This document shows, piece by piece, positions 20,047 to 56,347 of a DNA stretch of 64,000 nucleotides; the stretch's first letter is position 1; each line of letters starts with the position of its first letter. This DNA comes from Haliotis cracherodii (lineage: Eukaryota): contig NW_027266272.1 of the NCBI RefSeq assembly GCF_022045235.1, positions 20,832,001 through 20,896,000 on the forward strand, written 5' to 3'. Under the pieces are notes generated by a model, which was not told the origin of the DNA, made no database searches, and saw only the letters and a program-made list of their open reading frames with translations. A program made the position numbers and the translations under genes.

Positions 20047-21276
20047 ATGATGTCGCCAGTTTTGTATATTCTTGCCTGTGGTTTTGTGTCCGTTGAGACA
20101 CAACTCAGAAACGCCACTGGTGAATTCCGCCTCTACAATGACATCATTAAGAACAACAACCCATACGAGAGGCCCGTCTACAACAAATCCAAAACTATTA
20201 CGGTTGAATTTGACTTTCATCTACATACAGTGAGCCAATACATTGAGTCACAACAACAGCTCCTATGCACAGGGTGGTTTTTTGTGACGTGGTCTGATCA
20301 GTTTCTCACCTGGAATTCTGAAATGTATGACGGAGTTGAGTTTATCAGACCCCCAGATAGCTACGTGTGGAAACCTGATATTGTTGTGTCCAATTCCTTC
20401 CAACAACTCGACCGCCTTGGAGGAGATTTCGTGTCTCTGAAACTATTTTCAAATGGACGTATACAGTGGATGCCTGGGGATTTATTCTACCTGCCATGTA
20501 ATGTTGATGTTGAGTTGTACCCATTTGATAGCCTGAGGTGTTCTATGAATCTGGTTGTGTGGTCACACTCAGTGACAGAAGTTGACCTGAAACCACAGCA
20601 ATCACGTGCTGGAGTGTCCAGTTCCAATATACGGGGTCAGTGGAGTTTGACGTCAGCCCCTATCATTTCGTTGAAAAAACATTCTGACAACAAAACAATG
20701 CCAACAGTGAAAATTACACTCATTCTAGAAAGACTCCCAACCAATTTTGTCTTTAACTTTATCCTTCCCGTCATGATTCTCTCTCTTCTAGGAACGTTTG
20801 TGTTCCTCATTCCAGCAGATTCAGGAGAAAAAGTATCATTTGCCATCACAATTCCTCTTTCTTATGGTGTCTACATGGGATTTCTAACAAACATGGTACC
20901 ACAAAGTTCCGAGGGTGTGTCCACCTTTATCATTTTCCTTGGAATCACGCTATCATTGTCTGCGTTATTTGTCATCCTCAGCATATTCAGTGTCAGGATC
21001 TCAGCACGCAGTAATTCACGACCCGTTCCTAAAGCATTCCAAAGAATCACCGTCTGGGTTGAACATGTTAAAAACTGTGGTCGACAAAGAAGGTTGCATC
21101 CTAACCATATCTCTGAGGACACAGAACAATCAGATGAGTGCGAGGCTAAGGAACATATTCAAGTAATGACGTGGAATCGAGTGAGCTCGGCTCTGGATCT
21201 GTTTTTCTTCTGGGTGTTGTGTATACCTTTGTTGATAGCGATTCCAGTACTGTTGGTGTCCATAGCAGTGCTTTAA
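20047..21276 (+). CDS. Cys-loop ligand-gated ion channel, nAChR-like non-alpha subunit, type A1 (single coding exon, intact)
   Basis: Signal peptide, RPV, WxD, WKPDIV, Cys-loop C-x13-C (CNVDVELYPFDSLRC), four TM helices, DSGEK before M2, W..V...LD.FFF before M4; no loop-C CC. Confidence 0.95.
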   Translation: MMSPVLYILACGFVSVETQLRNATGEFRLYNDIIKNNNPYERPVYNKSKTITVEFDFHLHTVSQYIESQQQLLCTGWFFVTWSDQFLTWNSEMYDGVEFIRPPDSYVWKPDIVVSNSFQQLDRLGGDFVSLKLFSNGRIQWMPGDLFYLPCNVDVELYPFDSLRCSMNLVVWSHSVTEVDLKPQQSRAGVSSSNIRGQWSLTSAPIISLKKHSDNKTMPTVKITLILERLPTNFVFNFILPVMILSLLGTFVFLIPADSGEKVSFAITIPLSYGVYMGFLTNMVPQSSEGVSTFIIFLGITLSLSALFVILSIFSVRISARSNSRPVPKAFQRITVWVEHVKNCGRQRRLHPNHISEDTEQSDECEAKEHIQVMTWNRVSSALDLFFFWVLCIPLLIAIPVLLVSIAVL

Positions 21277-23894
21277 TGACAAAATATTTCTTCCGAACCA
21301 TCAATTGTATATGTCGTATTTAGTAGAATAGGTTATAGTAATTCTCTGAGAAAAATATTCATTGTGAATTGTGTGTGGAAATAACTGACAGTGTCTTTAT
21401 TTTTGTGTGACTTTAGTATGCTCTATTATGATGTGCCATCTGAAATACAAAACGTTATCACCAGAGAGTAACCAGTCTCGATTATCCGCCAAAACAGATT
21501 CCTTTCCGCACAAAAGCCAAAACAGCAGTGAAAGCTATATGAATGAATCACTGCAAATCAGTGATGACTCTAGTTTTTCGCGCCCCGAAACTCAAAACTG
21601 TATGGTCTGTTCTCCAATGATGGCACGGACGAGGACATAAGAACTCATCTAAATCAGATTAGACTAGCAAAAGCTATCATGTGTCGCAGGAGAAGAATCA
21701 GTTTTCAGCCCTCGCAATTGGGAGAGACATTGGGGGACGCTGGTTGTCAAGTCATAGTTGAGAGAACAAAGCAAAGTGACGCAGGTCTCTGACAGTTTTG
21801 TGTGTGTGAAGCCCAAAGGAGAGCGGGTACAGTCTGAAAAACTAAGGATCATATTCAGTGGAAATCTTGGATTTGACCTGACGATAATAGGATCCTTGGA
21901 CGTAACAACTTGGGCACCCGTGCACCGTTGATCGAATCCAAGCTTGACCAGAGTGTTAAACGACTATGACCGTGCAGTATGGATGGTGCACTCTCTGGCT
22001 TTGGTTTATGCAATACATGTTGTGTCAATAAATGAAGAAGGACGAATCAAAAGTCATGCCTACCGAGCAGAAACAGTGTTCAAATGAAGTAATGCCATAA
22101 AGTGACATGAATAATGAATAAGATTTTAACTGACCATTCAGCACTGAAAATTGCTAAAATTCCCATGTGCAATTAGCATATAATTATCATGACAACCAAG
22201 TCCAAAAATCACAATATTATGTTATTTTTATGTGTGCAGTTCGACAAATGCTTTAAGGTGACACTAGGACACATGTGTTTATCTTGAAGGCAGCAACGTC
22301 TGCGACTGCCACCAACCAAAGATTCCTTGGTTTCCACAGATGTTAAACAGAGTTGGTGCCAATTTCTAATCTTGCTGCACAGTGGAATCGGTGATAACAT
22401 GAATTAGCAGTTAATACAACTGACTTAAGAGGTGCGTTATTGACGGTTATTGATTGCTGTGACGTGCTCGGGCTCTGTGCCCATGTTTACATTGCACTTT
22501 CTAGAGCATGTAAATTGTAAATGAACTGCTGAAGTAGTTGGACGCACAAAACACTCGTTCCTGTTATGTTTCATTGTGAAATGTTAGGACCCTGCAACTT
22601 CGAGTTTTGACATTCTGAACAGTCCAAGCTGTTGTGTGCAAACAGAACAGGGTTGGTCTTTATGAGCGGATTTTGGGGACGTAAATCATTGTGCTTGTTG
22701 ATAGGAGACTGTTCGTTGGGATTAACGCAGCTGTGCATGTGCAACTGTTTCCATGATTTGACATTGTCCATCTGAAAGGTTGAGATGTGTGGGGGTGAAA
22801 GACAAACATAATGGTAATGATCTGAACTCATTTACGGAAGACCGGTAAGTAACATACTTGTGTATGCCATTTCACAGGAATGTGACCCTTTCTATTTATC
22901 TTACTTTATTTAATATATCACTGAGAGGTGGCACATGTTTTAGCTTATCTGCAAATTCGTAAGTGGGTTGTTATCACGTTGCACTCTGCTTTTAGAAGAG
23001 ATTTCTTATGAATATGGGAATGGTTTTGTCTCTTTTATCTATTTCCGTATTAGAACGACCAGTTTCTCGTCACATGACCTCACTCATCCAATGTTACATT
23101 TTTGTTTCAATATTTCCGTCACAAATGGATATTGTCTGTTAAAAATATATTTGACATATACTTTGAATAACGTAGTGTCCGTAAATCTGTACTTTGTAAT
23201 TATAATGTCCACCAACAATTATTGAGATATTTCTTTTCGACAAATATTTAGGTCTGCGGTGATCATACTGAAACAGTCATGCAGGGCAATGTCTTTTAGA
23301 ATAACCAGAACGCTGATTAGGTAAGAATTCGGATTAACTTATTAAATATTTGACCAGTCACATGCCAAATGTGACGTACTGCTGAAATTGTATTTGCGAT
23401 ACCACTAGAATTAAATCTCACTAGAATAGACATCTCCTAAATGACTTGATGGTTCAGTTAAAATTGTATTCAATAAGCACGGAATAGCCAATTCCCTTCC
23501 ATTGACGCTTCCTTTTTTGGCATGAACTTGGTTTTAATCACTATTTGATAGTAATCAATAAACACATGCTCAGGATAGTGGGAACCGTACAATCAACTCT
23601 CCTTTGAGCAGATTTCTTATGGACATGAAAGGTATTTTGTCGCTCTTATTTCCCTGCATTAACCTATGAAAGAGAATGCAAATGCCATTGATTAAAAAAG
23701 CTCCTGTTTTCGTTGGAAAGCAATGAATGGAATGTGGGAATACATTGTACCAAAACATGTTGTGTATATATTATAGGACACTAAGTCAATAATAAAAGCA
23801 TCCATCGATTCTAACCCATGTTTGTTGCAAGAGACGACTAAATAGATTGGGTGTTCCTGGTCGCTGCCGCGGGTCCAGCCTCGAGATATATATA

Positions 23895-25509
23895 CTACTC
23901 AAAAGAAGTTAAAGAACACCAGATATATAATACATGATTTAGCAAATTGGTCATGGCATTATGTATTATAACATTACTATCATCTAATGTTTGGCAACTT
24001 GTTGTACCACGTCTGGGGTATTGCTGTTCCTCCTGACACTTTCTGGAAACACTTCTGCTAGTAATACAAATGAAATGAAAACATGAGCAAAACACAGGAA
24101 TATTGTCGCCCAAACACAATGCTGCACCTGTCCTTAGCAACAACCAACATAATTTCCATGCTCAGCATATGAAAGTGGTGATGTTCATGGTGCACGTGCA
24201 TGTGTTCCCTTTAAGAAGGCGATGACGATGATCGTGTAATCACACTCTCCAAAACCATGCCACAGAGACGACATCTGACTGATGTTAATAGAGGACGAGC
24301 TATTGGTTGGCTCCAGGATGGCCTTTATTTACGTGAGGTGGGCAGAAGATTGCAGGTGTCCCCCTCTGTCATTCACACCCTTTGGCATCGTTTTGCTGCC
24401 ACTGTCAGAGTGCAAGAGCAACATCGTTCTGGACGGCCAAGGTGTACCTCACAACGTGATGACCGATACCTGGTTCTCCAAGCACTCAGGCAGCGTACAT
24501 CAACAGCAAACAACCTCAGGTTACAGTTAAGGGCTGTCAATAACACTGTCGTTAGTGATCAGACGGTGCGAAACCGTTTACAAGTTGCGAACTTGAGAAG
24601 TCGACGACAAGCAGTGAGACCACCTTTACGTCCAGTTCACAGAACAGCACGTCTGGCTTGGTGTCGACAACATGTGCATTAGAACAGACAGCAATGGTCT
24701 CGTGTACTGTTTACAGACGAGTCGCGATTCTGTTTGGAGCTCAATGATGGAAGAATACGGGTGTGGCGTCGTACTGGAGAGAGATTCACTGATGCCACAG
24801 TACGTGAACGTGTCGCTTTTGGTGGGGGATCAGTGTTGTATGGGGAGGATTCAGTTGGAATCACAGGACTCCTCTGTACCATATTGTCGGGAATCTGAAT
24901 GCTGCCAGGTACCGTGATGAGATTCTTGAACCCGTTGTATTGCCCACACTTCATCAGATTGGTCAAGGTGCTATCCTTCAGGACGACAATGCAAGACCCC
25001 ACCGCGCTCGGATTATCACTGACGATCACACACAAAGGCAGATTACCGTTATGCAATGGCCTGCTTATTCGCCAGATCTGGCGCCCATTGAACATCTTTG
25101 GGATGCCTTGGGAAGAGCTGTTCAAGCTAACCATCCACCTCCTGTTAATCTCCAGCAACTGTTAGGATTTCTTCATCAGGAATGGCAAGTAATTCTACAG
25201 GCAACACTGCAGCAGCTTGTCCGATCTATGTGCAGAAGATGTCAGGACTGTATTGCTTCCAGGGGTGGACATACCCGATATTGAAGGAACAGGATTATCC
25301 TGAACTGTAGTGTGTGACTTTTGATTTATAGGGTACATGCAGTTCATATTGTTTTGCTCTGGTTAGCTGTATGCCAGCGTTTCTTTCGTCAATGAAATGT
25401 CATGATTAAATACTTAAATTTCCCAATCAGTGTTGTTCCTGTGTCCACGATCTATTTTTTGAGTCATTTCGATAACGTATTTGGGTGTTCTTTAACTTCT
25501 TTTGAGTAG
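23895..25509 (+). mobile_element. Full-length Tc1 (DD34E) DNA transposon with inactivated transposase
   Basis: 26-bp TIRs ctactcaaaagaagttaaagaacacc flanked by TA; empty site at ~36240 in unit 2; transposase 24257-25284 has LFTDESRF, QDDNARPH and SPDLAPIE (34 residues between D and E), with a stop and frameshifts. Confidence 0.95.
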
Positions 25510-25625
25510 TAATATGCTGAATGCGGCGTTACACATAAAACAATCTAACAATATCAATTTGACTATTTTACATTCCCTCTTATTTAATCTCTGAGACGCG
25601 TGTATCTTTTCAGTATTGCAGCTCC

Positions 25626-26863
25626 ATGGCAATCATGCTGCTCTTCACAATCTGTAATCTGGTGATTGGTGTTGTGTCTATCGAGTCAGCCAGACACTCC
25701 ACTGGTGAATTCCGCCTCTACAATGACATCATCTGGAACAACAACCCAAACGAGAGGCCCGTCTACAACAAATCCGAAACTATAACAGTTGAATTTGACT
25801 TTCATCTTCACACAGTGAGCCGATACATTGAGTCTCAACAACAGCTCCTATGCACAGGTTGGTTTGTTGTGACGTGGTCTGATCAGTTTCTCAACTGGAA
25901 TTCTGAGATGTATGACGGAGTTGAGTTTATCAGACCCCCAGATAGCTACGTGTGGAAACCTGATATTGTTGTGTCCAATTCCTTCAGACAACTCAACCAC
26001 GTTGGAGGAGATTTCGTGCCTTTAAAAGTGTCCTCTTATGGACACGTGCAGTGGATGACAGGAGACTTATTCTACCTGCATTGTGAAACGGACGTTCTAA
26101 TGTATCCATTTGATAGCCTGAAGTGTTCCATGGAGATTGTCGTCTGGTCATATTCGACGTCAGAAGTTGACCTGAAAGTCCGCCAGTCAGTAGCTGGAAT
26201 ATCTAGTTCAAACATAGGCGGTCAGTGGAAACTAAAACCAACATCAATCACAGCCAAGGAAAAGACCTTTGACAACAAGCCAATATCACATGTGCTTATT
26301 ACGCTTACACTGGACAGACGCCCTGTGCATTTTGTCTTCAACTTCATCCTCCCTGTGTTGATCCTGTCGGTCCTGGGGACATTTGTGTTTCTCATTCCAG
26401 CAGATACAGGAGAAAAAATATCCTTTGCCATAACGATTCCTCTGTCATATGGGTCTACTTGGGCTTTCTCACAGACATGATACCCCAGAGCTCCCAGGGT
26501 ATATCGCCCTTCATCATCATCCTTGGACTCACACTTACAATGTCTGCAGTATTTGTCATCGTCAGCATCTTCAGTGTCCGGTTCTGTGGACAGAGTGAAT
26601 CGAAACCCATTCGTAAAACATTACAAAGATTCACAATTTGGGTCGAAAAGGTCGATGCATTTGGCCGGTTTGGAAACCGTGACAAACCTGCAATTGAGGA
26701 ATCTGGACGGTTACAAGAGCTCCAGGCTAAGACTACTCAGCCCGTCACATGGGAACGAGTGAGCAAAGCACTGGATTTGTTTTTCTTCTGGGTGCTGTGT
26801 ATCCCTTTACTTTTGAGAATTCCAATAACACTGATATACATCGGCTTGAACTTGGGTTTCTAG
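25626..26863 (+). pseudogene. nAChR-like subunit type B1, 1-bp frameshift in M2
   Basis: ORFs 25626-26480 and 26459-26863 together match B2/B3; tatGGGtc at 26451 versus tatGGGGtc in B2/B3. Could be a homopolymer assembly error. Confidence 0.85.
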
Positions 26864-28107: not shown

Positions 28108-28171
28108 TACACACACACACACACACATACACACACACTCACCACACACCACACACCACACACACACACAT
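28108..28171. repeat. (CA)n microsatellite at a SINE tail; also at 38886-38932 and 50052-50090
   Basis: Visible dinucleotide run. Confidence 0.9.
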
Positions 28172-30050: not shown

Positions 30051-30303
30051 TTTTCTTAAATAATCAGTTACGCATATGATTTCGTAGATTTGTTTAGTTA
30101 TATATTTACAACAAAAATACACGATTTTGAATCAAAGGAAATTATGTTAATTTCTTCACATATTGTGGTATTGTTTCAAATATGCAGGTAACTAGACAAA
30201 TCTCTAACATATTGTTTAAACACAATTTGGTTGGCTGACGGGACAGTCTCTTGAAAAGAAGTATGATTAAATATAACGTATCTATTACCCTTAACATTCA
30301 TTA

Positions 30304-31263
30304 TGAATTCCTTAATTACATACGTACATTTACAATTATAGGATTGTGTGAAACCTGGCTAAAAGCTTGCGACTTTTCAAAGGAGTTCTCTGAATATGTT
30401 TACTTTAATGTTGATGCTTGCCAAATCTCCAAACAAGGTAGGCTATCCGGTGGTATTACATTGTTAATAAAAAACACACTTTCAAAATCCATTTTATGGT
30501 CAAAAATATGTGACAACTGTGTTTTCATTTTGCTAAAGAAATCTGTATTTAATAATGCTAAGGACACTCTTATAGGTTGTGTATACATCAATCCAGAGAA
30601 GTCAAATTGGTATGTCAATAAAGCTGACAAGTGCGGCGTATCTATACTCCAGGATGCGTTAATATATGTACTTCAACAAGTGGGGAACGTCTCTATCCTC
30701 CTCGGGGGCGACTTCAACGCCCGCACTGGAACAGACTTTGATTTTGTTGAGGACGATATAATGAGAGCTCTGCAAATTGACAAGTGTCATTTTCTCTGTG
30801 AGGGTATTTGCACACAGCGATTTTCATCCGATAAGACTGTGAACAAATTTGGGCGAATTTTGCTTCATATGTGTGCTTCTCTAAACTTGACTATACTTAA
30901 TGGTCGTTGTGGATCTGATGCCAGTGTGGGAGATTTTACGTTTATGTCCCCTACAGGCACAAGCGTTATTGACTATGTTATCACAACAAGTGATTTGTTT
31001 ACATTGTGTAAGAATTTTAACATCGGATCTCGGATCGAGTCTCCGCACGCGCCATTCAGTTGTACTTTTCAGTCACGTGATACTGAAATTGACAATGCTA
31101 TGTCGGGTGAGAATCTGAAGCCGGATGTTTTTAATAGGAAAAAGGATAATGTTTCGTTACAAGCCTATTCACTGCAGCGTAAAACATATAAGGATACCGT
31201 TGGGTGTAAGAAAAGAGCTACCACTTTTTGTGAATAAACAATATATTCATTCAACATTCATTA
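30304..31263 (+). mobile_element. Internally deleted LINE (CR1/L2-group-like) carrying an APE endonuclease domain
   Basis: GLCETW, SGG, VYINP, GGDFNART, LNG, SVIDY and SPH motifs; AATAAA plus ATTC-type tail; flanked by aacattcatta direct repeats. Confidence 0.85.
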
Positions 31264-32405: not shown

Positions 32406-33395
32406 ATGACCATGATGTCGCCAATTTTGTTAATTCTAGCCTGTGGTTTTGTGTCTGTTGAGACACAACCCCCAGATAGCTACATCTGGATACCTGATCT
32501 TGTTGTGTCCAGTTCCTTCCAACAACTCGACCGCCTTGGAGGAGATTTCGTGTCTCTGAAACTATTTTCAAATGGACATATACAGTGGATGCCTGGGGAT
32601 TTATTCTACCTGCCATGTAGTGTGGATGTTGAGTTGTACCCATTTGATAGCCTGAAGTGTTCTATGGACCTGGTTGTGTGGTCACACTTAGTGACAGAAG
32701 TTGACCTGGAACCACGGCAATCTCGTGCTGGAGTGTCCAGTTCCAATATACGGGGTCAGTGGAGTTTGACGCCAGCCCTTATCATTTCGTTGAAAAAACA
32801 TTCTGACAACAAAACAATGCCAACAGTGAAAATTACACTCATTCTAGAAAGACTCCCAACCAATTTTGTCTTTAACTTTATCCTTCCCGTCATGATTCTC
32901 TCTCTTCTAGGAACGTTTGTGTTCCTCATTCCAGCAGATTCAGGAGAAAAAGTATCATTTGCCATCACAATTCCTCTTTCTTATGGTGTCTACATGGGAT
33001 TTCTAACAAACATGGTACCACAAAGTTCCGAGGGTGTGTCCACCTTTATCATTTTCCTTGGAATCACGCTATCATTGTCTGCGTTATTTGTCATCCTCAG
33101 CATATTCAGTGTCAGGATCTCAGCACGCAGTAATTCACGACCCGTTCCTAAAGCATTCCAAAGAATCACCGTCTGGGTTGAACATGTTAAAAACTGTGGT
33201 CGACAAAGAAGGTTGCATCCTAACCATATCTCTGAGGACACAGAACAATCAGATGAGTGCGAGGCTAAGGAACATATTCAAGTAATGACGTGGAATCGAG
33301 TGAGCTCGGCTCTGGATCTGTTTTTCTTCTGGGTGTTGTGTATACCTTTGTTGATAGCGATTCCAGTACTGTTGGTGTCCATAGCAGTGCTTTAA
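32406..33395 (+). CDS. nAChR-like subunit type A2: chimeric, in-frame deletion of 82 extracellular codons (possibly non-functional)
   Basis: ETQ joins directly to PPDSY; 246 bp missing relative to A3 (43347-43592); Cys-loop and M1-M4 intact. Confidence 0.8.
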   Translation: MTMMSPILLILACGFVSVETQPPDSYIWIPDLVVSSSFQQLDRLGGDFVSLKLFSNGHIQWMPGDLFYLPCSVDVELYPFDSLKCSMDLVVWSHLVTEVDLEPRQSRAGVSSSNIRGQWSLTPALIISLKKHSDNKTMPTVKITLILERLPTNFVFNFILPVMILSLLGTFVFLIPADSGEKVSFAITIPLSYGVYMGFLTNMVPQSSEGVSTFIIFLGITLSLSALFVILSIFSVRISARSNSRPVPKAFQRITVWVEHVKNCGRQRRLHPNHISEDTEQSDECEAKEHIQVMTWNRVSSALDLFFFWVLCIPLLIAIPVLLVSIAVL

Positions 33396-36407: not shown

Positions 36408-37637
36408 ATGCTGCTCTACACAATCTGCAATTTGGTGATTGGTGTTTTGTCCATCGAATCAGCCAGACACTCCACTGGTGAATTCCGCCTCTACAATGAC
36501 ATCATCTGGAACAACAACCCATACGAGAGGCCCGTCTACAACAAATCCGAAACTATAACAGTTGAATTTGACTTTCATCTACACACAGTGAGCCGATACA
36601 TTGAGTCTCAACAACAGCTCCTATGCACAGGGTGGTTTGTCGTGACGTGGTCTGATCAGTTTCTCACCTGGAATTCTGAGATGTATGACGGAGTTGAGTT
36701 TATCAGACCCCCAGATAGCTACGTGTGGATACCTGATCTTGTAGTGTCCAGTTCCTTCCAACAACTAAATCATATTGGAGGAGATTTTGTGCCTTTGAAA
36801 GTATCCTCTTATGGACACGTGCAGTGGATGACAGGAGACTTATTCTACCTGCATTGTGAAACGGACGTTCTGATGTATCCATTTGATAGCCTGACGTGTT
36901 CTTTGGAGATTGTCGTCTGGTCATATTCGACGTCAGAAGTTGACCTGAAAGTCCGCCAGTCAGTAGCTGGAACATCTAGATCAAACATAGGCGGTCAGTG
37001 GAAGCTAAAACCAACATCAATCACAGCCAAGGAAAAGACCTTTGACAACAAGCCAATATCACATGTGCTTATTACGCTTACACTGGACAGACGCCCTGTG
37101 CATTTTGTCTTCAACTTCATCCTCCCTGTGTTGATCCTATCCGTCCTGGGGACATTTGTGTTTCTCATTCCTGCAGATTCAGGAGAAAAGATATCCTTTG
37201 CCATAACGATTCCTCTTTCCTATGGGGTCTACATGGGCTTTCTCACAGACATGATACCCCAGAGCTCCCAGGGTATATCGCCCTTCATCATCATCCTTGG
37301 ACTCACACTTACAATGTCTGCAGTATTTGTCATCGTCAGCATCTTCAGTGTCCGGTTCTGTGGACAGAGTGAATCGAAACCCATTCGTAAAACATTACAA
37401 AGATTCACAATTTGGGTCGAAAAGGTCGATGCATTTGGCCGGTTTGGAAACCGTGACAAATCTGCAATTGAGGAATTTGGACAGTTACAAGAGCTCCAGG
37501 CTAAGACTACTCAGCCCGTCACATGGGAACGAGTGAGCAAAGCACTGGATTTGTTTTTCTTCTGGGTGCTGTGTATCCCTTTACTTTTGGGAATTCCAAT
37601 AACACTGATATACATCGGCTTGAACTTGGGTTTCTAG
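36408..37637 (+). CDS. Cys-loop nAChR-like non-alpha subunit type B2 (intact)
   Basis: 409 aa; signal peptide; Cys-loop CETDVLMYPFDSLTC; DSGEK; four TM helices; no vicinal Cys. Confidence 0.95.
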   Translation: MLLYTICNLVIGVLSIESARHSTGEFRLYNDIIWNNNPYERPVYNKSETITVEFDFHLHTVSRYIESQQQLLCTGWFVVTWSDQFLTWNSEMYDGVEFIRPPDSYVWIPDLVVSSSFQQLNHIGGDFVPLKVSSYGHVQWMTGDLFYLHCETDVLMYPFDSLTCSLEIVVWSYSTSEVDLKVRQSVAGTSRSNIGGQWKLKPTSITAKEKTFDNKPISHVLITLTLDRRPVHFVFNFILPVLILSVLGTFVFLIPADSGEKISFAITIPLSYGVYMGFLTDMIPQSSQGISPFIIILGLTLTMSAVFVIVSIFSVRFCGQSESKPIRKTLQRFTIWVEKVDAFGRFGNRDKSAIEEFGQLQELQAKTTQPVTWERVSKALDLFFFWVLCIPLLLGIPITLIYIGLNLGF

Positions 37638-41391: not shown

Positions 41392-41634
41392 TTTTCTTAA
41401 ATAATCAGTTACGCATATGATTTCGTAGATTTGTTTAGTTATATATTTACAACAAATACACGATTTTGAATCAAAGGAAATTATGTTAATTTCTTCACAT
41501 ATCGTGGTATTGTTTCAAGTAACTAGACAAATCTCTAACATATTGTTTAAACACATTTTGGTTGGCTGACGGGACAGTCTCTTGAAAAGAAGTATGATTA
41601 AATATAACGTATCTATTACCCTTAACATTCATTA

Positions 41635-42594: not shown

Positions 42595-43283
42595 AGCCAT
42601 TTAGATACAGACTACATCCGTGGTCTAGTGGAAAGAGAGTCTGCCCGGAGAACGAAAGGTCGGTAGTTCGACGCCCGCCTACATAATGCGAAAAGACGTT
42701 TAAAGATAGTAGTTCTTTTTACCCTGCCTGGTCGGCTGAGATTCAGTATACTGTGTCTTAGTGGGGTATCAATGATACATTGTGGCGTGCTATCTGTGTG
42801 GACTAGAACTACACAAGCGGCATTCGTACTGACCGTCAACGACAAACACGCACGCATGCACTCACACACACGCGCACACACACATGCACGTCGCGGCGTA
42901 AGTGTGTAAGTGTAAAAAGAAGCACTATCTTTTAACGTCTTTTCGTATGACGCATAATCACCTCACCTCACCTCACCTCACCTCACCATGTATTGTCAGC
43001 AGCGGTATGAAACTTGCAAACAGTTATTTGGCCATCTGCATGTAGCAAGTAATCAAATTTCAGAATTGATAAGCACTCTCACACCACAAAACCAGATTTG
43101 TTTGCATATATTCAGAAAGAATTACTTAATTATTTTTTATATTAATTTCAGGTAAGACACTAGAAGCACTTTTGACCAAAGTCAGTGTGTTTCATCGGCT
43201 GGTCCCAGAATTGAGAACAGGCAGCCAAGTGTGCTGAATATTAAGCTGTCATCGCAGAGGAAGAAGATAAGGGCTGATGTTAT

Positions 43284-44519
43284 ATGACCATGATGTCGCC
43301 AATTTTGTTAATTCTTGCCTGTGGTTTTGTGTCTGTTGAGACACAACTCAGAAACGCCACTGGTGAATTCCGCCTCTACAATGACATCATCTGGAACAAC
43401 AACCCATACGAGAGGCCCGTCTACAACAAATCCGAAACTATTACAGTTGAATTTGACTTTCATCTACACACAGTGAGCCGATACATTGAGTCTCAACAAC
43501 AGCTCCTATGCACAGGGTGGTTTGTCGTGACGTGGTCTGATCAGTTTCTCACCTGGAATTCTGAGATGTATGACGGAGTTGAGTTTATCAGACCCCCAGA
43601 TAGCTACATCTGGATACCTGATCTTGTTGTGTCCAGTTCCTTCCAACAACTCGACCGCCTTGGAGGAGATTTCGTGTCTCTGAAACTATTTTCAAATGGA
43701 CATATACAGTGGATGCCTGGGGATTTATTCTACCTGCCATGTAGTGTGGATGTTGAGTTGTACCCATTTGATAGCCTGAAGTGTTCTATGGACCTGGTTG
43801 TGTGGTCACACTCAGTGACAGAAGTTGACCTGGAACCACGGCAATCTCGTGCTGGAGTGTCCAGTTCCACTATACGGGGTCAGTGGAGTTTGACGTCAGC
43901 CCCTATCATTTCGTTGAAAAAACATTCTGACAACAAAACTTTGTCAACAGTGAAAATTACACTCATTCTAGAAAGACTCCCAACCAATTTTGTCTTTAAC
44001 TTTATCCTTCCCGTCATGATTCTCTCTCTTCTAGGAACGTTTGTGTTCCTCATTCCAGCAGATTCAGGAGAAAAAGTATCATTTGCCATCACAATTCCTC
44101 TTTCTTATGGTGTCTACATGGGATTTCTAACAAACATGGTACCACAAAGTTCCGAGGGTGTGTCCACCTTTATCATTTTCCTTGGAATCACGCTATCATT
44201 GTCTGCGTTATTTGTCATCCTCAGCATATTCAGTGTCAGGATCTCAGCACGCAGTAATTCACGACCCGTTCCTAAAGCATTCCAAAGAATCACCGTCTGG
44301 GTTGAACATGTTAAAAGCTGTGGTCGACAAAAAAAGTCGCATCCTAACCATATCTCTGTGGACACAGAACAATCAGATGATTGCGAGGCTAAGGAACATA
44401 CTCAAGTAATGACGTGGAAGCGAGTGAGCAAGGCTCTGGATCTGTTTTTCTTCTGGGTGTTGTGTATACCTTTGTTGATAGCGATTCCAGTTCTGTTGCT
44501 GTCCATAGCGTTTTTTTAA
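43284..44519 (+). CDS. Cys-loop nAChR-like non-alpha subunit type A3 (intact)
   Basis: 411 aa; Cys-loop CSVDVELYPFDSLKC; M1-M3 identical to A1. Confidence 0.95.
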   Translation: MTMMSPILLILACGFVSVETQLRNATGEFRLYNDIIWNNNPYERPVYNKSETITVEFDFHLHTVSRYIESQQQLLCTGWFVVTWSDQFLTWNSEMYDGVEFIRPPDSYIWIPDLVVSSSFQQLDRLGGDFVSLKLFSNGHIQWMPGDLFYLPCSVDVELYPFDSLKCSMDLVVWSHSVTEVDLEPRQSRAGVSSSTIRGQWSLTSAPIISLKKHSDNKTLSTVKITLILERLPTNFVFNFILPVMILSLLGTFVFLIPADSGEKVSFAITIPLSYGVYMGFLTNMVPQSSEGVSTFIIFLGITLSLSALFVILSIFSVRISARSNSRPVPKAFQRITVWVEHVKSCGRQKKSHPNHISVDTEQSDDCEAKEHTQVMTWKRVSKALDLFFFWVLCIPLLIAIPVLLLSIAFF

Positions 44520-46604
44520 TGACAAAATGTTTCTTACGAACCATCAATTGTATATGTCGTATTTAGTAGAATAGGTTATAGTAATTCTCTGAGAAAAATA
44601 TTCATTGTGAACTGTGCGTAGGAATCAATGATAAGATCTTTGTTTTTTATGACTTGAGATTGCACTATTATGATGTGCCATCTGAAATAAAAAGCGTCGT
44701 CACCAGAGAATAACCAGTCTCGGGTTTCCGTCAAAACAGATTCCTTTTGGCACAAAAAGCAAAACAGCAGTGAAAGCTATATGAATGGATCACTGCAAAT
44801 CAGTGTTGACACTAGTTTTTTGCGACCCGAAACTCAAAACTGTACGCCCCATGCTTTGGTTTATGCAATACGTTTTGTGAGAATAAATGAGGAAGAACGA
44901 ATCAAACGTCATGATTACGTATCAGAAACAGTGTTCAGATGAAGAAATGCTTTTAAGAGACATGAATAATGAATAAAATCGTATCGTATTGTTCTCAAGA
45001 ATGGACCAATTTGGCGTCATCTCCCTTTTAACTGACCATTCAGCATTGAAAATTGTTAAAATTCCCATGTGCAAATAGCATATAATTATCAATAACTCAC
45101 AATATTATGTTATTTTTATGTGTGCAGTTAGACACCTGCGTTAAGGTGACACTAGGGCACATGTGTTTATCTTGAAGGCAGCAACGTCTGCGACTGCCAC
45201 CAACCAAAGATTCCTTGGTTTCCACAGATGGTATACAGAGTTGGTGCCAATTATTAATATTGCTGCACAATGGAATCTGTGATAACGTGTACTGACGGTT
45301 ATTGATTGCTATTATGCTCTGGGCCTCTGTGCCCATGTTTACATTGCACTGTCTGGATCCCGTAAATTGTAAATGAACTGCGGAAGTAGTTGGACGCACA
45401 AAACACTCGTTCCTTTTATGCTGCGAATTCGTGTTTCATTGTGAAATGTTAGGACACTACAACTCCGAGTTTTGACATCCTGAACAGTCCAAGCTATTGT
45501 GTGCAAACAGAACAGAGTTGGGATTTTATGAGCGGATTTTGTCAACATAAATCATTGTGCTTGTTGATAGCAGATAGTTCGTTGGGATTAATGCAGCTGT
45601 TCAACTGTTTCCATGACTTGACAGTGTTCATCGAAAAGGTTCAGATGTGTTTGGCGATAAAGTCAAAGACAAACATAATGGTAATAATCTAAACTGATTT
45701 TCGGAGGACTGGTAAGTAACATACTTGAACATACCATTTAACTGGAATATGACCCTTCTATTTATTTTACTTTATTCATTATATCATTGAGAGGTAGCAC
45801 ATGTCATTAGCCTATCTGCAATTGCGTAAGTGGTTTGGCATCACCATTCACTATTTCTTATGAATATGGGAATGGTTTTATCCGTTATATATTTTATTTA
45901 TTTCGGTATAAGAGCGATCAGTTTCTCGTCACATGACCTCACGGATCCAATGTTTCATTTTTGTTTCAATATTTCTGTCAAAAATGGATATTGTCTGTCA
46001 AAAATGTATTTGACATATGCTTTGAATAACGTAGTGAATGCAAATCTGCATTTTGTAATTATAATGCCCACCAACAATTATTGAGATATTACTTTTCGAC
46101 AAATATTTAGGTCTGTGGTGATCAAACTGAAACAGTCATGCAGGGAAATGTCTTTTTGAATAACCAGATCGCTGATTAGGTAGGAATTCGGATTAACTTA
46201 TTAAATATTTGACCAGTCACATGCCAAATGTGACGTACTGCTAAAATTGTATTTGTGAAACCATTAGAATTATATCTCAGAATAAGAATGTGGAGAATGG
46301 AGACTTCTGATGTGATGAATTGAATTTGTATCATTTTTGTCAAAATATACGATAATATTAGGGACCCACAATTTCACTGCCTCAAAACACGTGATTAGTA
46401 TTCTGTGAAGGAAGGAGCGGACATCAGGACATCCAGCATACAACTTATTTTTAGCACATCTGGCCTAAAAGGATTTTGTCGCCGCAGGTCGTCCGCCGTG
46501 GGCGTACTCAATGCAATTGTTTTACATTTTTGACATCTCCAAAATGGCTTGATGGTTCAGTTAAGATTGTATTCAATAAGCACCGAATAACAATTCCCTT
46601 CCAT

Positions 46605-47010
46605 TGAATTACTCACCTGAACTAGGAATAAAGGAGACCGGTGAGACCATTTTATCTGATTCATATTTAGATGTATGCATAAAGTTACAGAGTGACAAAA
46701 CACTCTCCCAATTTCTACATTTCGCAACTTTTGAGGTCAATCGAGCATGCCCCTTTTACGAAGATTACAACTCTGTGTCAGTAGTTGTTTGATCAAGGTT
46801 ACAACATTCAATGATTGAGCAAGGCTTCCAACCATTTTTATGGAAGACATACAGAGGAAAGTTTCAAATTTGACGCATCAGTGACAAAAATAATGTCCGA
46901 TGCAATTCCCTATTTTGACTTGTCCCCGTGTTAAACAATTGATTTGACTTTGAATGTGTTTGCGACGGGTGCCACTAGTGGGGCAGGATCTGCTCCCTTT
47001 TTCGCGAAAA
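46605..47010 (+). mobile_element. Penelope-like RT / 3' fragment shared by units 3 and 4 (second copy ~58210-58590)
   Basis: YSPELGIKETGETILSDSYLDVCI resembles YP.EL.IK.T......YLD; absent at the equivalent sites in units 1 and 2. Confidence 0.55.
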
Positions 47011-47499
47011 CCGAGTTTTAATCACAATTTGATAGTAATTAATAAACACATGCTCAGGATAGTGGGAATCGTACAATCAACTCTCATTTGAGCAGATTTG
47101 TAATGGACATGAAAAGGGTTTTGTCGCTCTCATTTCCCTGCATTTACCGATGAAAGAAAATGCAAATGCCATCGATTAAACAAGCTCGTGTTTTCGTTGG
47201 AAAGCAATGAATCGAATGCATTGTACGTTGTGTATTTAATATAGCGTTAATTAAAGAATCCCTCTATTCTAGCCCATGTTTGTTGCAAGAGACACTAAAT
47301 GGATTGGGTGTTCCTGCTCGCTGACGCGGGTCCAGCCTCGAGTTATATATATTCCTGAATGCTGCGTTAGATATCTAACAATCTAACAATATCAATTTGA
47401 CTATTTTACATTCCCTCATATTTTACCTCTTTTCATTATTGCAGATCCACGGCATCAAAAGTCGGCACTGCGAAGTTCTACATTACCATCTGTGCAATC

Positions 47500-48729
47500 A
47501 TGCTGCTCTTCACAATCTGTAATCTGGTGATTGGTGTTGTGTCCATCGAGTCAGTCAGACACTCCACTGGTGAATTCCGCCTCTACAATGACATCATCTG
47601 GAACAACAACCCATACGAGAGGCCCGTCTACAACAAATCCGAAACTATAACAGTTGAATTTGACTTTCATCTACACACAGTGAGCCGATACACTGAGTCT
47701 CAACAACAGCTCCTATGCACAGGGTGGTTTGATGTGACGTGGTCTGATCAGTTTCTCACCTGGAATTCTGAGATGTATGACGGAGTTGAGTTTATCAGAC
47801 CCCCAGATAGCTACGTGTGGAAACCTGATCTTGTTGTGTCCAATTCCTTCCAACAACTCAACCATATTGGAGGAGATTTCGTGCCTTTGAAAGTATCCTC
47901 TTATGGACACGTGCAGTGGATGACAGGAGACTTATTCTACCTGCATTGTGAAACGGACGTTCTAATGTATCCATTTGATAGCCTGAAGTGTTCCATGGAG
48001 ATTGTCGTCTGGTCACATTCGACGTCAGAAGTTGACCTGAAAGTCCGCCAGTCAGTAGCTGGAACATCCAGTTCAAACATAGGCGGTCAGTGGAAGCTAA
48101 AACCAACATCAATCACAGCCAAAGAAAAGACCTTTGACAACAAGCCAATATCACATGTACTTATTACGCTTACACTGGACAGACGCCCTGTGCATTTTGT
48201 CTTCAACTTCATCCTCCCTGTGTTGATCCTGTCGGTCCTGGGGACATTTGTGTTTCTCATTCCTGCAGATTCAGGAGAAAAAATATCCTTTGCCATAACG
48301 ATTCCTCTGTCATATGGGGTCTACATGGGCTTTCTCACAGACATGATACCCCAGAGCTCCCAGGGTATATCGCCCTTCATCATCATCCTTGGACTCACAC
48401 TTACAATGTCTGCAGTATTTGTCATCGTCAGCATCTTCAGTGTCCGGTTCTGTGGACAGAGTGAATCGAAACCCATTCGTAAAACATTACAAAGATTCAC
48501 AATTTGGGTCGAAAAGGTCGATGCATTTGGCCGGTTTGGAAACCGTGACAAACCTGCAATTGAGGAATCTGGACAGTTACAAGAGCTCCAGGCTAAGACT
48601 CCTCAGCCCGTCACATGGGAACGAGTGAGCAAAGCACTGGATTTATTTTTCTTCTGGTTGTTGTGTATCCCTTCACTTGTAGGAATTCCAATAACACTGA
48701 TATACATCGGCTTGAACTTGGGTTTCTAG
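47500..48729 (+). CDS. Cys-loop nAChR-like non-alpha subunit type B3 (intact)
   Basis: 409 aa; Cys-loop CETDVLMYPFDSLKC; DSGEK; four TM helices. Confidence 0.95.
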   Translation: MLLFTICNLVIGVVSIESVRHSTGEFRLYNDIIWNNNPYERPVYNKSETITVEFDFHLHTVSRYTESQQQLLCTGWFDVTWSDQFLTWNSEMYDGVEFIRPPDSYVWKPDLVVSNSFQQLNHIGGDFVPLKVSSYGHVQWMTGDLFYLHCETDVLMYPFDSLKCSMEIVVWSHSTSEVDLKVRQSVAGTSSSNIGGQWKLKPTSITAKEKTFDNKPISHVLITLTLDRRPVHFVFNFILPVLILSVLGTFVFLIPADSGEKISFAITIPLSYGVYMGFLTDMIPQSSQGISPFIIILGLTLTMSAVFVIVSIFSVRFCGQSESKPIRKTLQRFTIWVEKVDAFGRFGNRDKPAIEESGQLQELQAKTPQPVTWERVSKALDLFFFWLLCIPSLVGIPITLIYIGLNLGF

Positions 48730-50054: not shown

Positions 50055-50094
<40 letters not shown>

Positions 50095-52914: not shown

Positions 52915-54105
52915 TGAATTCCTTAATTACATACGTACATTTACAATTATAGGATTGTGCGAAACCTGGCTAAAAGCTTACGACTTTTCAAAGGAGTTCT
53001 CTGAATATGTTTACTTTAATGTTGAATCTCCAAACAAGGTAGGCTATCCGGTGGTATTACATTGTTAATAAAAAACACACTTTCAAAATCCATTTTATGG
53101 TCAAAAATATGTGACAACTGAGTTTTCATTTTGCTAAAGAAATCTGTATTTAATAATGCTAAGGACACTCTTAAAGGTTGTGTATACATCAATCCAGAGA
53201 AGTCAAATTGGTATGTCGGCGTATCTATACTCCAGGATGCGTTAATATATGTACTTCAACAAAGGGGGACGTCTCTATCCTCGGGGGCGACTTCAACGCC
53301 CGCACTGGAACAGACTTTGATTTTGTTGAGGACGATATAATGAGAGCTCTGCAAATTGACAAGTGTCATTTTCTCTGTGAGGGTATTTGCACACAGCGAT
53401 TTTCATCCGATAAGACTGAACAAATTTGGGCGAATTTTGCTTAATATGTGTGCTTCTCTAAACCTGTCTATACTTAATGGTCGTTGTGGATCTGATGCCA
53501 GTGTGGGAGATTTTACGTGTATGTCCTCTACAGGCGCAAGCGTTATTTACTATGTTATCACAACAAGTGATTTGTTTACATTGTGTAAGAATTTTAACAT
53601 CGGATCTCGGATCGAGTCTCCGCACGCGCCAATCAATTGTACCCTTCAGTCACGTGATACTGAAATTGACAATGCTATGTCGGGTGAGAATGTGAAGCCG
53701 GATGTATGTATTAAGTATACTTGGCGTGATAACGTTGGTGATCGGTTAAGAGAAAATGTCTCATGTGATGAAATTGAGCATTTGTTTGATGATTGTATTA
53801 CGTTAGCATTAACAGACATAAATGCAGCAATTAGTAAATTTACGGACGCTTTGTTGAAAGCAGCAGATTTTACAAAGCGTAAGATTGTTCAGCATCATGG
53901 ACGCGACAGGCCATGGTTTGATAAAGAATGTGATTATCACAGAAGAGAAGCCTTCCGACTACTAGATGTTTTTAATAGTATAAAGGATAATGTTTCGTTA
54001 CAAGCCTATTCACTGCAGCATAAAACATATAAGGATACCGTTGGGTGTAAGAAAAGAGCTAACACTTTTTTGTGAATAAACAATATATTCATTCAACATT
54101 CATTA
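52915..54105 (+). mobile_element. LINE APE endonuclease fragment, unit 4 copy (longer, frameshifted)
   Basis: Retains an extra segment (~53705-53968, including RPWFDKEC) that is deleted in units 2 and 3. Confidence 0.85.
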
Positions 54106-55136
54106 AGCCATTTAGATACAGACTACATCCGTGGTCTAGTGGAAAGAGAGTCTGCCCGGAGAACGAAACGTCGGTAGTTCGACGCCCGCCTACATCATGC
54201 GAAAAGACGTTTAAAGATAGTAGTTCTTTTTACCCTGCCTGGTCGGCTGAGATTCAGTATACTGAATGCACTCACGCATGCACTCACACACAAACACGCA
54301 CACACACATGCACGTTGCGGCGTAAGTGTGTAAGTGTAAAAAGAAGCACTATCTTTTAACGTCTTTTCGTATGACGCATAATCTTCACCTCACCTCACCA
54401 TGTATTGTCAGCAGCGGTATGAAACTTGCAAACAATTCTTTGGCCATCTGCATGTGGCTATAAAGATACAAAATATACATACATAGTACCCATTTAAATG
54501 TACATATTTTGTACACGAAAAGGGTCAAAATATCAGCTACCATTCACACTATTACTAATATATGTAAACCAAATTCAATTCAATATGCCATATGCAAAAC
54601 ACAGATTCAGTTTGAAAACCGGACTAATTTATCGACCTTACAATGACTCATTACACTAAAGAAATTCCGCCGTGAAGAACCGGGCTGGAATCGGTCAGCA
54701 GCAGGTAAAGTCATCGGGTGGTCCAGCTAACTAAATTGGTTGATCCATTTCATCAGATACCAATTATTAAGATCGATGCTTATGATGTCAATCACTGGAT
54801 TGTCTGGTTCAGACTCGATAGTTAAAAAGAGCTTGAATGTTGCTGAGCGTGGAGGTAAACAACAAACAGATGAAATCAAAAGACAAAACAATTATTATAT
54901 GTGCCCCAACATGGTCAGCATGTTATCAAATTTCAGAATTGATAAGCACTCTCACACAATAAAAAGAGATTTGTTTGCATATATTTAGAAAGAATTACTT
55001 AATTATTTTTTATATTAATTTCAGGTAAGACACTAGAAGCGCTTTTGACCAAAGTCAGTGTGTTTCATCGGCTGGTCCCAGAATTGAGAACAGGCAGCCA
55101 AGTGTGCTGAACATTAAGTTCTGATGCAAAACGACC

Positions 55137-56347
55137 ATGATGTCGCCAATTTTGTTAATTCTTGCCTGTGGTTTTGTGTCTGTTGAGACACAACTCAGAA
55201 ACGCCACTGGTGAATTCCGCCTCTACAATGACATCATCTGGAACAACAACCCATACGAGAGGCCCGTCTACAACAAATCCGAAACTATTACAGTTGAATT
55301 TGACTTTCATCTACACACAGTGAGCCGATACATTGAGTCACAACAACAGCTCCTATACACAGGGTGATTTGTTGTTATGTGGTCTAATCAGTTTCTCACC
55401 TGGAATTCTGAAATGTATGACTGAGTTAAGTTTATCAGACCCCCAGATAGCTACGTCTGGATACCTGATCTTGTTGTGTCAATTCCTTCCAACAACTCGA
55501 CCGCCTTGGAGGAGATTTCGTGTCTCTGAAACTATTTTCAAATGGACATATACAGTGGATGCCTGGGGATATATTCTACCTGCCATGTAGTGTGGATGTT
55601 GAGTTGTACCCATTTGATAGCCTGAAGTGTTCTATGGACCTGGTTGTGTGGTCACACAAAGAAGTTGACCTGAAACCACGTGCTGGAGTGTCCAGTTCCA
55701 ACATACGGAGTCAGTGGAGTTTGACGCCAGCCTCTATCATTTCACTGAAAAAACATTCTGACAACAAAACAATGTCAACAGTGAAAATTACACTCATTCT
55801 AGAAAGACTCCCAACCAATTTTGTCTTTAACTTTATCCTCCACGTCATGATTCTCTCTCTTCTAGGAACGTTTGTGTTCCTCATTCCAGCAGATTCAGGA
55901 GAAAAAGTATCATTTGCCATCACAATTCCTCTTTCTTATGGAGTCTACATGGGATTTCTGACAAACATGGTACCACAAAGTTCCGAGGGTGTGTCCACCT
56001 TTATCATTTTCCTTGGAATCACGCTATCATTGTCTGCGTTATTTGTCATCCTCAGCATATTCAGTGTCAGGATCTCAGCACGCAGTAATTCACGACCCGT
56101 TCCTAAAGCATTCCAAAGAATCACCGTCTGGGTTGAACATGTTAAAAACTGGTCGACAAAGAAGGCCGCATCCTAACCATATCTCTGAGGACACAGAACA
56201 ATCAGATGATTCCGAGGCTAAGGAACATACTCAAGTAATGACGTGGAAGCGATTGACAAGGCCCTTGATCTGTTTTTCTTCAGGGTGTTGTGTATACCTT
56301 TGTTGATAGAGATTCCAGTACTGTTACTGTCCATAGCGGTGCTTTAA
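55137..56347 (+). pseudogene. nAChR-like subunit type A4 pseudogene
   Basis: TGG>TGA at the loop-D Trp (55365-55367), a second stop, several frameshifts and small deletions relative to A3. Confidence 0.95.

What the first reader, a model, noticed from the sequence alone, without database searches (positions are those of the whole stretch)
20047..56347. Tandem array of intronless nAChR-like channels lacking the ACh site: candidate chemosensory receptor family
Seen: seven same-strand Cys-loop channel genes, each CDS in one exon, with a short M3-M4 loop, showing birth and death (4 intact, 3 damaged). Loop C has no Cys-Cys and no Tyr (A: KKHSDNKTMPTV; B: KEKTFDNKPISHV). The loop-A Tyr is Ser (PDIVVSN). 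Loop-B (VVWS) and loop-D (TGWF) Trp remain. Known: canonical nAChR alpha subunits need these residues and their genes are usually intron-rich; cephalopod chemotactile receptors are intronless, tandem, ACh-insensitive nAChR derivatives. Inference: this may be an independent or related expansion detecting environmental ligands.
Basis: partly seen in the sequence, partly recalled or inferred. Interest (0 to 1): 0.9.

Follow-up and report, generated by a model that had tools for sequence, protein, structure and literature searches.

The report
Abalone orphan nicotinic-like channel array
Seven head-to-tail abalone genes (four intact, three broken) encode nicotinic-receptor-like ion-channel subunits that have lost the acetylcholine-binding residues; they are real, transcribed and under selection, but belong to a mollusc-wide gene expansion already published, and a taste or smell role is untested.

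Summary
Window 20047-56347 carries seven same-strand Cys-loop channel genes, each with its CDS in one exon. Four are intact (A1, B2, A3, B3) and three damaged (B1, A2, A4).

They form about 3.5 copies of an ~11 kb unit holding one A-type and one B-type gene. Loop-C Cys-Cys and Tyr and the loop-A Tyr are absent; loop-B and loop-D Trp and the cation-type pore (GEK, 9' Leu) remain.

New here:
- A ~295 bp A/B gene-conversion tract.
- A2 is a clean A3(5')/A1(3') crossover product.
- B genes have a spliced non-coding upstream exon, so they are not strictly intronless.
- RNA-like runs from three studies hold A and B contigs.
- Haliotis rufescens has the same array.

The genome has at least 103 such loci. 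None of 81 mollusc relatives keeps the ACh motif. The nearest named relatives are gastropod. Identity to octopus or squid chemotactile receptors (24%/20%) is below that to alpha-7 (28%).

Intronless tandem nAChR expansions (Jiao 2019) and the chemosensory idea for divergent gastropod clades (MolluscaGenes 2026) are already published. This scan reached the same verdict on other arrays of this genome. The ligand and the tissue remain unknown.

The parts
20047..21276 (+). A1: intact A-type nAChR-like gene (409 aa, single coding exon)
   Evidence: ORF. Pfam LBD and TM domains. The exact protein is in the public collection.
22831..22854 (+). Conserved splice donor (G|GTAAGT) of the non-coding upstream exon of B1
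   Evidence: Pattern search. Homologous to the donor used in unit 3.
24257..25284 (+). Tc1/mariner transposase remnant inside the B1 5'-UTR intron, present in unit 1 only
   Evidence: HTH_Tnp_Tc3_2 and DDE_3 hits.
25626..26863 (+). B1: B-type pseudogene; a 1-bp deletion near 26450 shifts the frame in M2-M3
30251..31237 (+). LINE endonuclease (Exo_endo_phos) fragment carried in each unit; further copies at 42011-42568 and 53356-54075
32406..33395 (+). A2: A3(5')/A1(3') recombinant with a 246-bp in-frame deletion at 32466 (329-aa ORF lacking beta1-beta2 and loop D)
   Evidence: A2 matches A3 at 18 of 18 informative sites up to CDS nt 564, then A1 at 20 of 20 from nt 587. Flanks agree: upstream 98.3% to A3, downstream 98.8% to A1. 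Deletion.
36408..37637 (+). B2: intact B-type gene (409 aa)
43284..44519 (+). A3: intact A-type gene (411 aa). RNA-like contigs cover 43225-43652, 43623-43744 and 43928-44385
43357..43651 (+). A/B gene-conversion tract (CDS nt ~74-368, codons 25-122; N-terminal helix, loop D, loop A), as placed in A3. The same tract in B3 lies at about 47564-47858
   Evidence: A3 and B2 differ at 4 of 295 nt in the tract and at 264 of 862 outside it (binomial p 3e-40). Third codon positions differ at 3 of 98 versus 130 of 288.
45527..45711 (+). Non-coding upstream exon of B3 (3' part seen; its start was not mapped)
   Evidence: Contig 6 of run X1 joins 45708 to 47446. The donor reads ctg|gtaagt.
45712..47444 (+). 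5'-UTR intron of B3 (GT..AG, 1733 nt)
   Evidence: The acceptor ttgcag| is conserved before B1, B2 and B3. The H. rufescens model P0051 reads through the same acceptor.
47500..48729 (+). B3: intact B-type gene (409 aa). RNA-like contigs cover 47830-48900
55131..56347 (+). A4: A-type pseudogene (2 stop codons and 5 deletions, of which 3 shift the frame)
57225..58907 (+). Truncated fourth unit: homologue of the B upstream exon and intron (donor at 57303-57326) with no B coding exon

Best explanation
The region is one local array of the mollusc-wide, alpha-7-derived, intron-poor expansion of nicotinic-receptor-like genes, in an abalone genome (Haliotis, 97% protein identity to H. rufescens).

An ~11 kb unit carries two old paralogues, A and B (dS ~0.9, 68% protein identity). 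Each encodes a complete Cys-loop subunit: signal peptide, ligand-binding domain with the Cys-loop, M1-M3, a short loop and M4. The pore has a cation-type signature.

The unit was multiplied by unequal crossing-over; A2 is the crossover product. Its copies exchange sequence by gene conversion and decay one by one.

Inferred, not shown: the intact A and B subunits assemble, perhaps together, into cation channels. Their own interfaces cannot bind acetylcholine in the classical way. They would therefore respond to another, unknown ligand, or work only beside a true alpha subunit.
For: **Identity**
- Pfam LBD and TM domains.
- Best solved relatives are alpha-7 (E 3e-51; Z 31.3).
- AlphaFold model has mean pLDDT 89 with the full pLGIC fold.

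**Pore**
- GEK, 9' Leu and 13' Val are kept.

**ACh site**
- Y93, Y188, C190, C191 and Y195 are all replaced.

**Selection**
- A versus B: omega 0.31 overall, 0.12 in M1-M3, about 0.3 in the C-terminal LBD.
- B versus B: omega 0.23-0.37.

**Transcription**
- Contigs of three RNA-like runs lie on the A3 and B3 coding sequences.
- One contig is spliced across a GT-AG intron.
- A DNA-like run covers every bin of the stretch, which these three runs do not.

**Array history**
- Self-alignment shows the ~11 kb unit.
- A2 has a clean 18/18 then 20/20 switch of parental sites.
- The conversion tract has p 3e-40.
- H. rufescens has 4 A and 4 B proteins that interleave with this genome's copies.

**Family context**
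- At least 103 six-frame matches in this genome, mostly single open frames in tandem clusters.
- 919 relatives at E below 1e-30.
- The nearest named relatives are Patella, Lottia, Gigantopelta, Batillaria and other Haliotis.
- Intronless tandem expansion is described in PMC6896357.
Against: - No functional data exist: no ligand, no proof of assembly, and the tissue is unknown because run and sample names are coded.
- The runs are only guessed to be RNA; the spliced contig has depth of about 4.
- Among the recent A copies omega is 0.5-1.3, on few substitutions. Some 'intact' A copies could therefore be drifting.
- A Pro at pore position 8', next to the 9' Leu gate, is unusual (9 of 84 sequences). 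Its effect on gating is unknown.
Confidence: 0.72

Rival explanations
1. These are environmental chemoreceptors that work like cephalopod chemotactile receptors. A and B would form channels in peripheral sensory cells (tentacle, epipodium, osphradium, larva) gated by external molecules, through a neofunctionalisation independent of cephalopods.
For: - They share CR-like features: a single coding exon, tandem birth and death, a lost ACh pharmacophore and a retained cation pore.
- The clade is lineage-specific.
- All 9 A1/A3 amino-acid differences in LBD residues 123-232 fall in the binding loops (not significant).
- In bivalves the expanded genes are expressed most in gill, where ChAT is not expressed (PMC6896357).
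- The idea has been raised for divergent gastropod clades (PMC13174522).
Against: - No tissue or ligand evidence exists.
- A/B differences are not enriched in the binding loops: 58% identity in loops versus 56% elsewhere, p = 1.
- The LBD is under purifying rather than diversifying selection between A and B (omega ~0.3).
- Loop C is polar and charged (KKHSDNK), unlike the hydrophobic CR pocket described in the literature.
- No closeness to the CRs is seen.
Confidence: 0.22
2. These are non-alpha (complementary or structural) subunits of ordinary acetylcholine-gated receptors. A and B would lend only their complementary face to a true alpha subunit encoded elsewhere, as beta, gamma, delta and epsilon subunits do in vertebrates.
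For: - Complementary-face residues are partly kept: loop-D Trp, the loop-E Gln117 equivalent, and Leu119 replaced by Met.
- Loop-B Trp is kept.
- Lack of loop-C Cys-Cys and loop-A Tyr is normal for non-alpha subunits (my own knowledge).
- NCBI names some paralogues beta-like.
Against: - More than 100 such non-alpha genes, with rapid lineage-specific turnover, far exceed what accessory subunits would need.
- The loop-E Leu109 equivalent is Lys in both A and B, which would put a positive charge at the cation site. This is an inference from the alignment only.
Confidence: 0.22
3. These are functionless retrocopies decaying neutrally, whose open frames persist only because the copies are young.
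For: - Three of the seven copies are broken.
- Omega among the A copies is near 1.
- Jiao et al. report that more of the intron-poor genes have little or no expression.
Against: - A and B have diverged to dS ~0.9 and still keep omega 0.31 overall and 0.12 in the pore helices.
- Both types are intact in H. rufescens, and A-type relatives are intact in H. asinina.
- Contigs consistent with transcripts exist, one of them spliced.
Confidence: 0.04

Closest known systems
Expanded intron-poor, tandem nAChR-like genes of molluscs and other lophotrochozoans (Jiao et al. 2019, PMC6896357; clades in MolluscaGenes 2026, PMC13174522)
   Same: - Alpha-7-affiliated Cys-loop subunits with the CDS in a single exon.
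- Arranged in tandem arrays.
- Paralogues cluster by lineage.
- GEK cation motif.
- Substitutions at the ACh-binding residues.
   Different: - No difference of kind.
- Abalone was not among the species analysed by Jiao et al. ('Haliotis' and 'abalone' each occur 0 times in that text).
- This locus adds an A-B pair unit, a conversion tract and a 5'-UTR intron.
Cephalopod chemotactile receptors (octopus CRT1/CR518, squid CRB1)
   Same: - nAChR-derived and intronless.
- Tandemly expanded.
- Lack the ACh signature.
- Cation channels that can be homo- or heteropentamers (PMC11526382).
   Different: - Only 24% (CRT1) and 20% (CRB1) identity, with Z 22.6 and 24.3, against 28% and Z 31.3 for alpha-7.
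- The nearest relatives are gastropod, not cephalopod.
- Loop C is polar rather than hydrophobic.
- No sensory expression or ligand is known.
Alpo4, the orphan nAChR-like receptor of the annelid Alvinella pompejana (PMC10338036)
   Same: - A lophotrochozoan orphan.
- No loop-C Cys-Cys.
- Not gated by ACh or serotonin in tests.
- The ligand is unknown.
   Different: - Alpo4 keeps the aromatic cage (F103, W159, Y199, Y205, W65); the abalone genes keep only the two Trp.
- Identity is 22%, Z 25.3.
Vertebrate alpha-7 nAChR
   Same: - The best sequence and structure match.
- Shares the Cys-loop, the loop-B and loop-D Trp, the GEK motif and the 9' Leu.
   Different: - The abalone genes lack Y93, Y188, C190-C191 and Y195.
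- Their M3-M4 loop is about 55 residues against about 150.
- They have a Pro at 8' and no Glu at 20'.
- Their CDS lies in one exon.

Membership tests
Cys-loop pentameric ligand-gated ion channel, nAChR/5-HT3 (cationic) branch | Neur_chan_LBD plus Neur_chan_memb domains, the 13-residue Cys-loop, and four TM helices | tested here: met
   Pfam hits. C151 and C165 are invariant. The AF2 model shows M1-M4. The best PDB matches are nAChRs.
Cys-loop pentameric ligand-gated ion channel, nAChR/5-HT3 (cationic) branch | Cation-selective M2 signature: -1' Glu in GEK and no PAR motif | tested here: met
   The sequence reads PADSGEK; -1' Glu is present in 82 of 84 aligned sequences, including all A and B copies.
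nAChR alpha subunit | Vicinal Cys-Cys at the tip of loop C (YxCC), with the loop-A and loop-C Tyr | tested here: not met
   Loop C reads KKHSDNKTMPTV in A and KEKTFDNKPISHV in B. The loop-A Tyr is Ser.
Molluscan/lophotrochozoan expanded intron-poor nAChR-like genes (Jiao 2019) | No intron, or only 1-2 introns | tested here: met
   The whole CDS lies in one ORF. B genes have one 5'-UTR intron.
Molluscan/lophotrochozoan expanded intron-poor nAChR-like genes (Jiao 2019) | Tandem arrays and lineage-specific clustering of paralogues | tested here: met
   Unit repeats. Genome-wide clusters. The A/B clade has support 1.0 and contains only Haliotis; its sister is from Patella.
Cephalopod chemotactile receptors (CR clade) | Phylogenetic placement inside the CR clade | tested here: inconclusive
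   No CR sequence with a usable reference could be fetched, so no joint tree was built. Indirect evidence is negative: 20-24% identity to solved CRs against 28% to alpha-7, and all 20 named relatives are gastropod or bivalve.
Cephalopod chemotactile receptors (CR clade) | Intronless CDS, tandem clusters and loss of the ACh-binding residues | tested here: met
   These features are shared with the whole molluscan expansion, so they do not discriminate.
Cephalopod chemotactile receptors (CR clade) | Hydrophobic orthosteric pocket under diversifying selection | tested here: inconclusive
   Loop C is polar and charged, and loop E carries a Lys. LBD omega is about 0.3 between A and B. No site model could be run on so few sequences.
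Cephalopod chemotactile receptors (CR clade) | Expression in contact-chemosensory epithelium; gating by poorly soluble molecules and not by ACh | not testable with these tools
   Run and sample names are coded. Electrophysiology is needed.

The most novel reading that the evidence does not exclude
The conserved A-B gene pair encodes a heteromeric, non-cholinergic chemoreceptor of abalone sensory epithelia or larvae. This would be an origin of ionotropic chemosensation from nAChRs in gastropods, independent of cephalopod chemotactile receptors. Gene conversion would hold the N-terminal third (helix, loop D, loop A) identical in both partners, while loops B, C, E and F diverge to tune ligand choice.
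Probability: 0.15. Interest if true: 0.65.

Novelty: new member of a known kind. Interest (0 to 1): 0.3.

Why it matters
If these channels were shown to sense external chemicals, the route from neurotransmitter receptor to chemoreceptor known from octopus would extend to gastropods. It would also give abalone biology (settlement, feeding, spawning cues) a receptor family to test.

As it stands, the locus is a well-resolved example of how such arrays evolve: unequal crossover, paralogue gene conversion and decay. It also offers a concrete A+B pair to express. It does not change what is already published about the molluscan nAChR expansion.

Tried and rejected
- I therefore had no DNA of the H. 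rufescens or H. asinina orthologues, no cross-species dN/dS and no synteny.
- **Paper not held.** van Giesen 2020 (PMC7605239) is not held.
- **No cephalopod CR sequence.**
  - Two word-indexed protein searches, the exhaustive phmmer search and 20 name look-ups returned only gastropod, bivalve, vertebrate and arthropod proteins.
  - The solved CR chains appear only in the structure search, without a usable sequence reference.
  - The joint tree with CRs was therefore left out.
- **Uninformative results.**
  - The protein atlas search gave only generic LBD clusters.
  - The species check with an H. cracherodii protein matched at 90% over one exon. I name only the genus; earlier scan notes call the genome black abalone.
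- **Weak statistics.**
  - A/B differences are not enriched in the binding loops (p = 1).
  - All 9 A1/A3 differences in LBD residues 123-232 lie in loops, but loops make up 69% of that region, so this is not significant.
- **Steps not taken.**
  - The N run at 8260-8399 was left alone.
Full report
**What is there**

ORF listing and tblastn find seven nAChR-like genes on the + strand between 20047 and 56347.
- Intact: A1 (20047-21276), B2 (36408-37637), A3 (43284-44519) and B3 (47500-48729), at 409-411 aa each.
- B1 (25626-26863) has a 1-bp deletion near 26450.
- A2 (32406-33395) has a 246-bp in-frame deletion at 32466.
- A4 (~55131-56347) has two stop codons (55365, 55422) and five deletions, three of which shift the frame.

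Pfam gives Neur_chan_LBD plus Neur_chan_memb for all intact copies. The AlphaFold2 model of A1 is confident (mean pLDDT 89). It shows the beta-sandwich, M1-M3, a short loop and M4.

**Array structure**

Self-alignment shows an ~11 kb unit repeated about 3.5 times. Each unit holds one A gene, one B gene and a LINE endonuclease fragment. Unit 1 additionally holds a Tc1/mariner remnant. The fourth unit stops after the B upstream exon and intron homologue (57225-58907) and has no B coding exon.

A and B are old paralogues:
- They differ at 30.6% of nucleotides outside the tract, with dS about 0.9.
- Omega is 0.31 overall, 0.12 in M1-M3 and about 0.3 in the C-terminal half of the ligand-binding domain.
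- B copies compared with each other give omega 0.23-0.37.
- A copies give omega 0.5-1.3, on few substitutions.

**Two recombination signatures**

1. CDS nt ~74-368 (codons 25-122: N-terminal helix, loop D, loop A) is homogenised between A and B.
   - A3 and B2 differ at 4 of 295 sites there, against 264 of 862 outside (p 3e-40).
   - Third codon positions differ at 3 of 98 versus 130 of 288.
   - Inside the tract the copies do not group by type: A1-A3 differ at 16 sites and A3-B2 at 4.
   - This is ectopic gene conversion, still active after the unit duplications.
   - The tract is also the best conserved part of the extracellular domain against H. asinina (85-89% identity), so selection may add to the effect.
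2. A2 is a crossover product.
   - It matches A3 at all 18 informative sites up to nt 564 and A1 at all 20 from nt 587.
   - Its flanks agree: upstream 98.3% to A3, downstream 98.8% to A1.
- That is the expected product of an unequal crossover that created the newest unit.

**Gene structure and transcription**

Contigs of three small, RNA-like runs from three studies were laid on 43100-48900. The organism is coded and the contigs are about 3-4% diverged from the window.
- They cover A-specific parts of A3 and B-specific parts of B3.
- They leave several intergenic bins empty, whereas a DNA-like run covers all 30 bins.
- One contig joins 45708 to 47446. The window there reads ctg|gtaagt ... ttattgcag|a, a canonical GT-AG intron (45712-47444) ending 55 nt before the B3 start codon.
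- The donor is conserved in all four units and the acceptor before B1, B2 and B3.
- The 432-aa H. rufescens model P0051 reads through the same acceptor.

So the coding sequence is in one exon, but B genes are not strictly intronless. A conserved tttcag|g about 130 nt upstream of the A genes is a candidate acceptor without read support. The kind of run is a guess by the tool and the tissue is unknown.

**The acetylcholine site**

Alignment with alpha-7 gives:

| Position (alpha-7) | A | B |
|---|---|---|
| Loop A Y93 | S | S |
| Loop C Y188 | K | K |
| Loop C C190 | S | F |
| Loop C C191 | D | D |
| Loop C Y195 | M/L | I |
| Loop B W149 | kept | kept |
| Loop D W55 | kept | kept |

- Loop C is shorter than in alpha-7 and is polar.
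- The loop-E Leu109 equivalent is Lys.
- The pore keeps -1' Glu (GEK), 9' Leu and 13' Val, so it is cation-type.
- It has Pro at 8', seen only in the A/B clade and one Patella protein, and Asn or Asp at 20'.

The inference needs a caveat: non-alpha subunits of ordinary nAChRs also lack these residues. The sequence shows that A and B cannot supply a classical principal face. It does not show that a receptor containing them ignores ACh.

**Context in this genome and beyond**

- Six-frame search of the 1.18 Gb genome gives at least 103 matches, a lower bound. Most are single open frames of about 400 aa in tandem clusters on many contigs.
- The sampled paralogues all lack loop-C Cys-Cys.
- An exhaustive phmmer search finds 919 relatives at E below 1e-30. 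After B (69%), the best single-domain hits are at most 38% identical.
- In an 84-sequence alignment, 0 of 81 mollusc sequences keep the vicinal cysteines and essentially none keeps the loop-A Tyr. 63 keep the loop-B Trp.
- In the tree, the A/B clade (support 1.0) contains only Haliotis. Its sister (support 1.0) is a Patella caerulea protein plus an unnamed one. The wider neighbours are Patella, Lottia, Gigantopelta, Batillaria and other Haliotis. The whole radiation joins vertebrate alpha-7.
- H. rufescens has four A and four B proteins that interleave with this genome's copies. H. asinina and H. rubra have A-like genes. The array therefore predates the split from H. rufescens.
- NCBI already annotates these genes as 'alpha-7-like'.

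**Relation to chemotactile receptors**

Structure searches rank canonical nAChRs first:

| Solved structure | Z | Identity |
|---|---|---|
| Alpha-7 | 31.3 | 28% |
| Alpo4 | 25.3 | 22% |
| Squid CRB1 | 24.3 | 20% |
| Octopus CRT1 | 22.6 | 24% |

None of the 20 relatives I could name is a cephalopod. I could not obtain a CR sequence with a usable reference, so no joint tree was made and that test stays open. The literature places CRs as a mainly cephalopod clade, with a separate 'CR-like' clade that includes gastropods (PMC13174522). Whether A/B belongs to that clade is untested.

**What is already known**

- Jiao et al. 2019 (PMC6896357) describe massive, intronless, tandem, lineage-specific nAChR expansions in molluscs. 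In bivalves expression is highest in gill and responds to stress and infection.
- The MolluscaGenes preprint (2026) reports divergent clades with substituted binding residues. It explicitly proposes that they may add an ionotropic component to gastropod chemosensation.
- The Alpo4 paper makes the same argument for an annelid orphan.
- This scan has followed up at least six other such arrays in this same genome with the same verdict.

**Verdict**

This is a real, partly active gene array and a new member of a known kind. The identity and the evolutionary mechanics are shown. Assembly, ligand and tissue are inferred or unknown.

My estimates:

| Reading | Probability |
|---|---|
| Functional orphan cation-channel subunits of the known expansion | ~0.7 |
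| Within that, peripheral chemoreceptor | ~0.2 |
| Within that, accessory subunit of ACh receptors | ~0.2 |
| Neutral decay of all copies | <0.05 |

Noticed in passing
window 50943-51029 (- strand): A short inverted fragment matching aa 33-61 of the A/B ligand-binding domain (76-79% identity). It lies inside the conversion-tract region, between B3 and the LINE fragment of unit 3.
   Followed up: no
window 20854-20856 (A1 codon 270); same codon in all A and B copies: Pro at pore position 8', next to the 9' Leu gate. It is found only in the eight A/B-clade sequences and one Patella caerulea protein out of 84 aligned relatives. Gly is at 12' and 16'.
   Followed up: partly
window 44652-44845 and 46786-46979: Two short interspersed repeats inside the unit. 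Summed contig depth in the DNA-like run X16 jumps to about 1,400 and about 21,000, against 30-140 nearby, with many chimeric joints.
   Followed up: no
window 59375-60732: A satellite-like tandem repeat just beyond the truncated fourth unit, with self-matches at offsets of about 484 and 171 bp and 91-96% identity. ORF 60335-60655 shows the repeat as a duplicated peptide.
   Followed up: no
window 10700-14243 (+) and 6294-6881 (-): Remnants of mobile elements upstream of the array. One ORF has a weak reverse-transcriptase match (RVT_1, E 7.5e-4, below the Pfam cut-off) and sits among unassigned ORFs. There is also a second Tc1/mariner transposase fragment.
   Followed up: partly
window 43150 and 19916 (also upstream of A4): A conserved polypyrimidine tract followed by tttcag|g, about 130 nt upstream of each A-gene start codon. 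This is a candidate 5'-UTR splice acceptor for A genes, with no read support so far.
   Followed up: partly
window 8260-8399: An N run of 140 bases (assembly gap or masked). It was left untouched.
   Followed up: no
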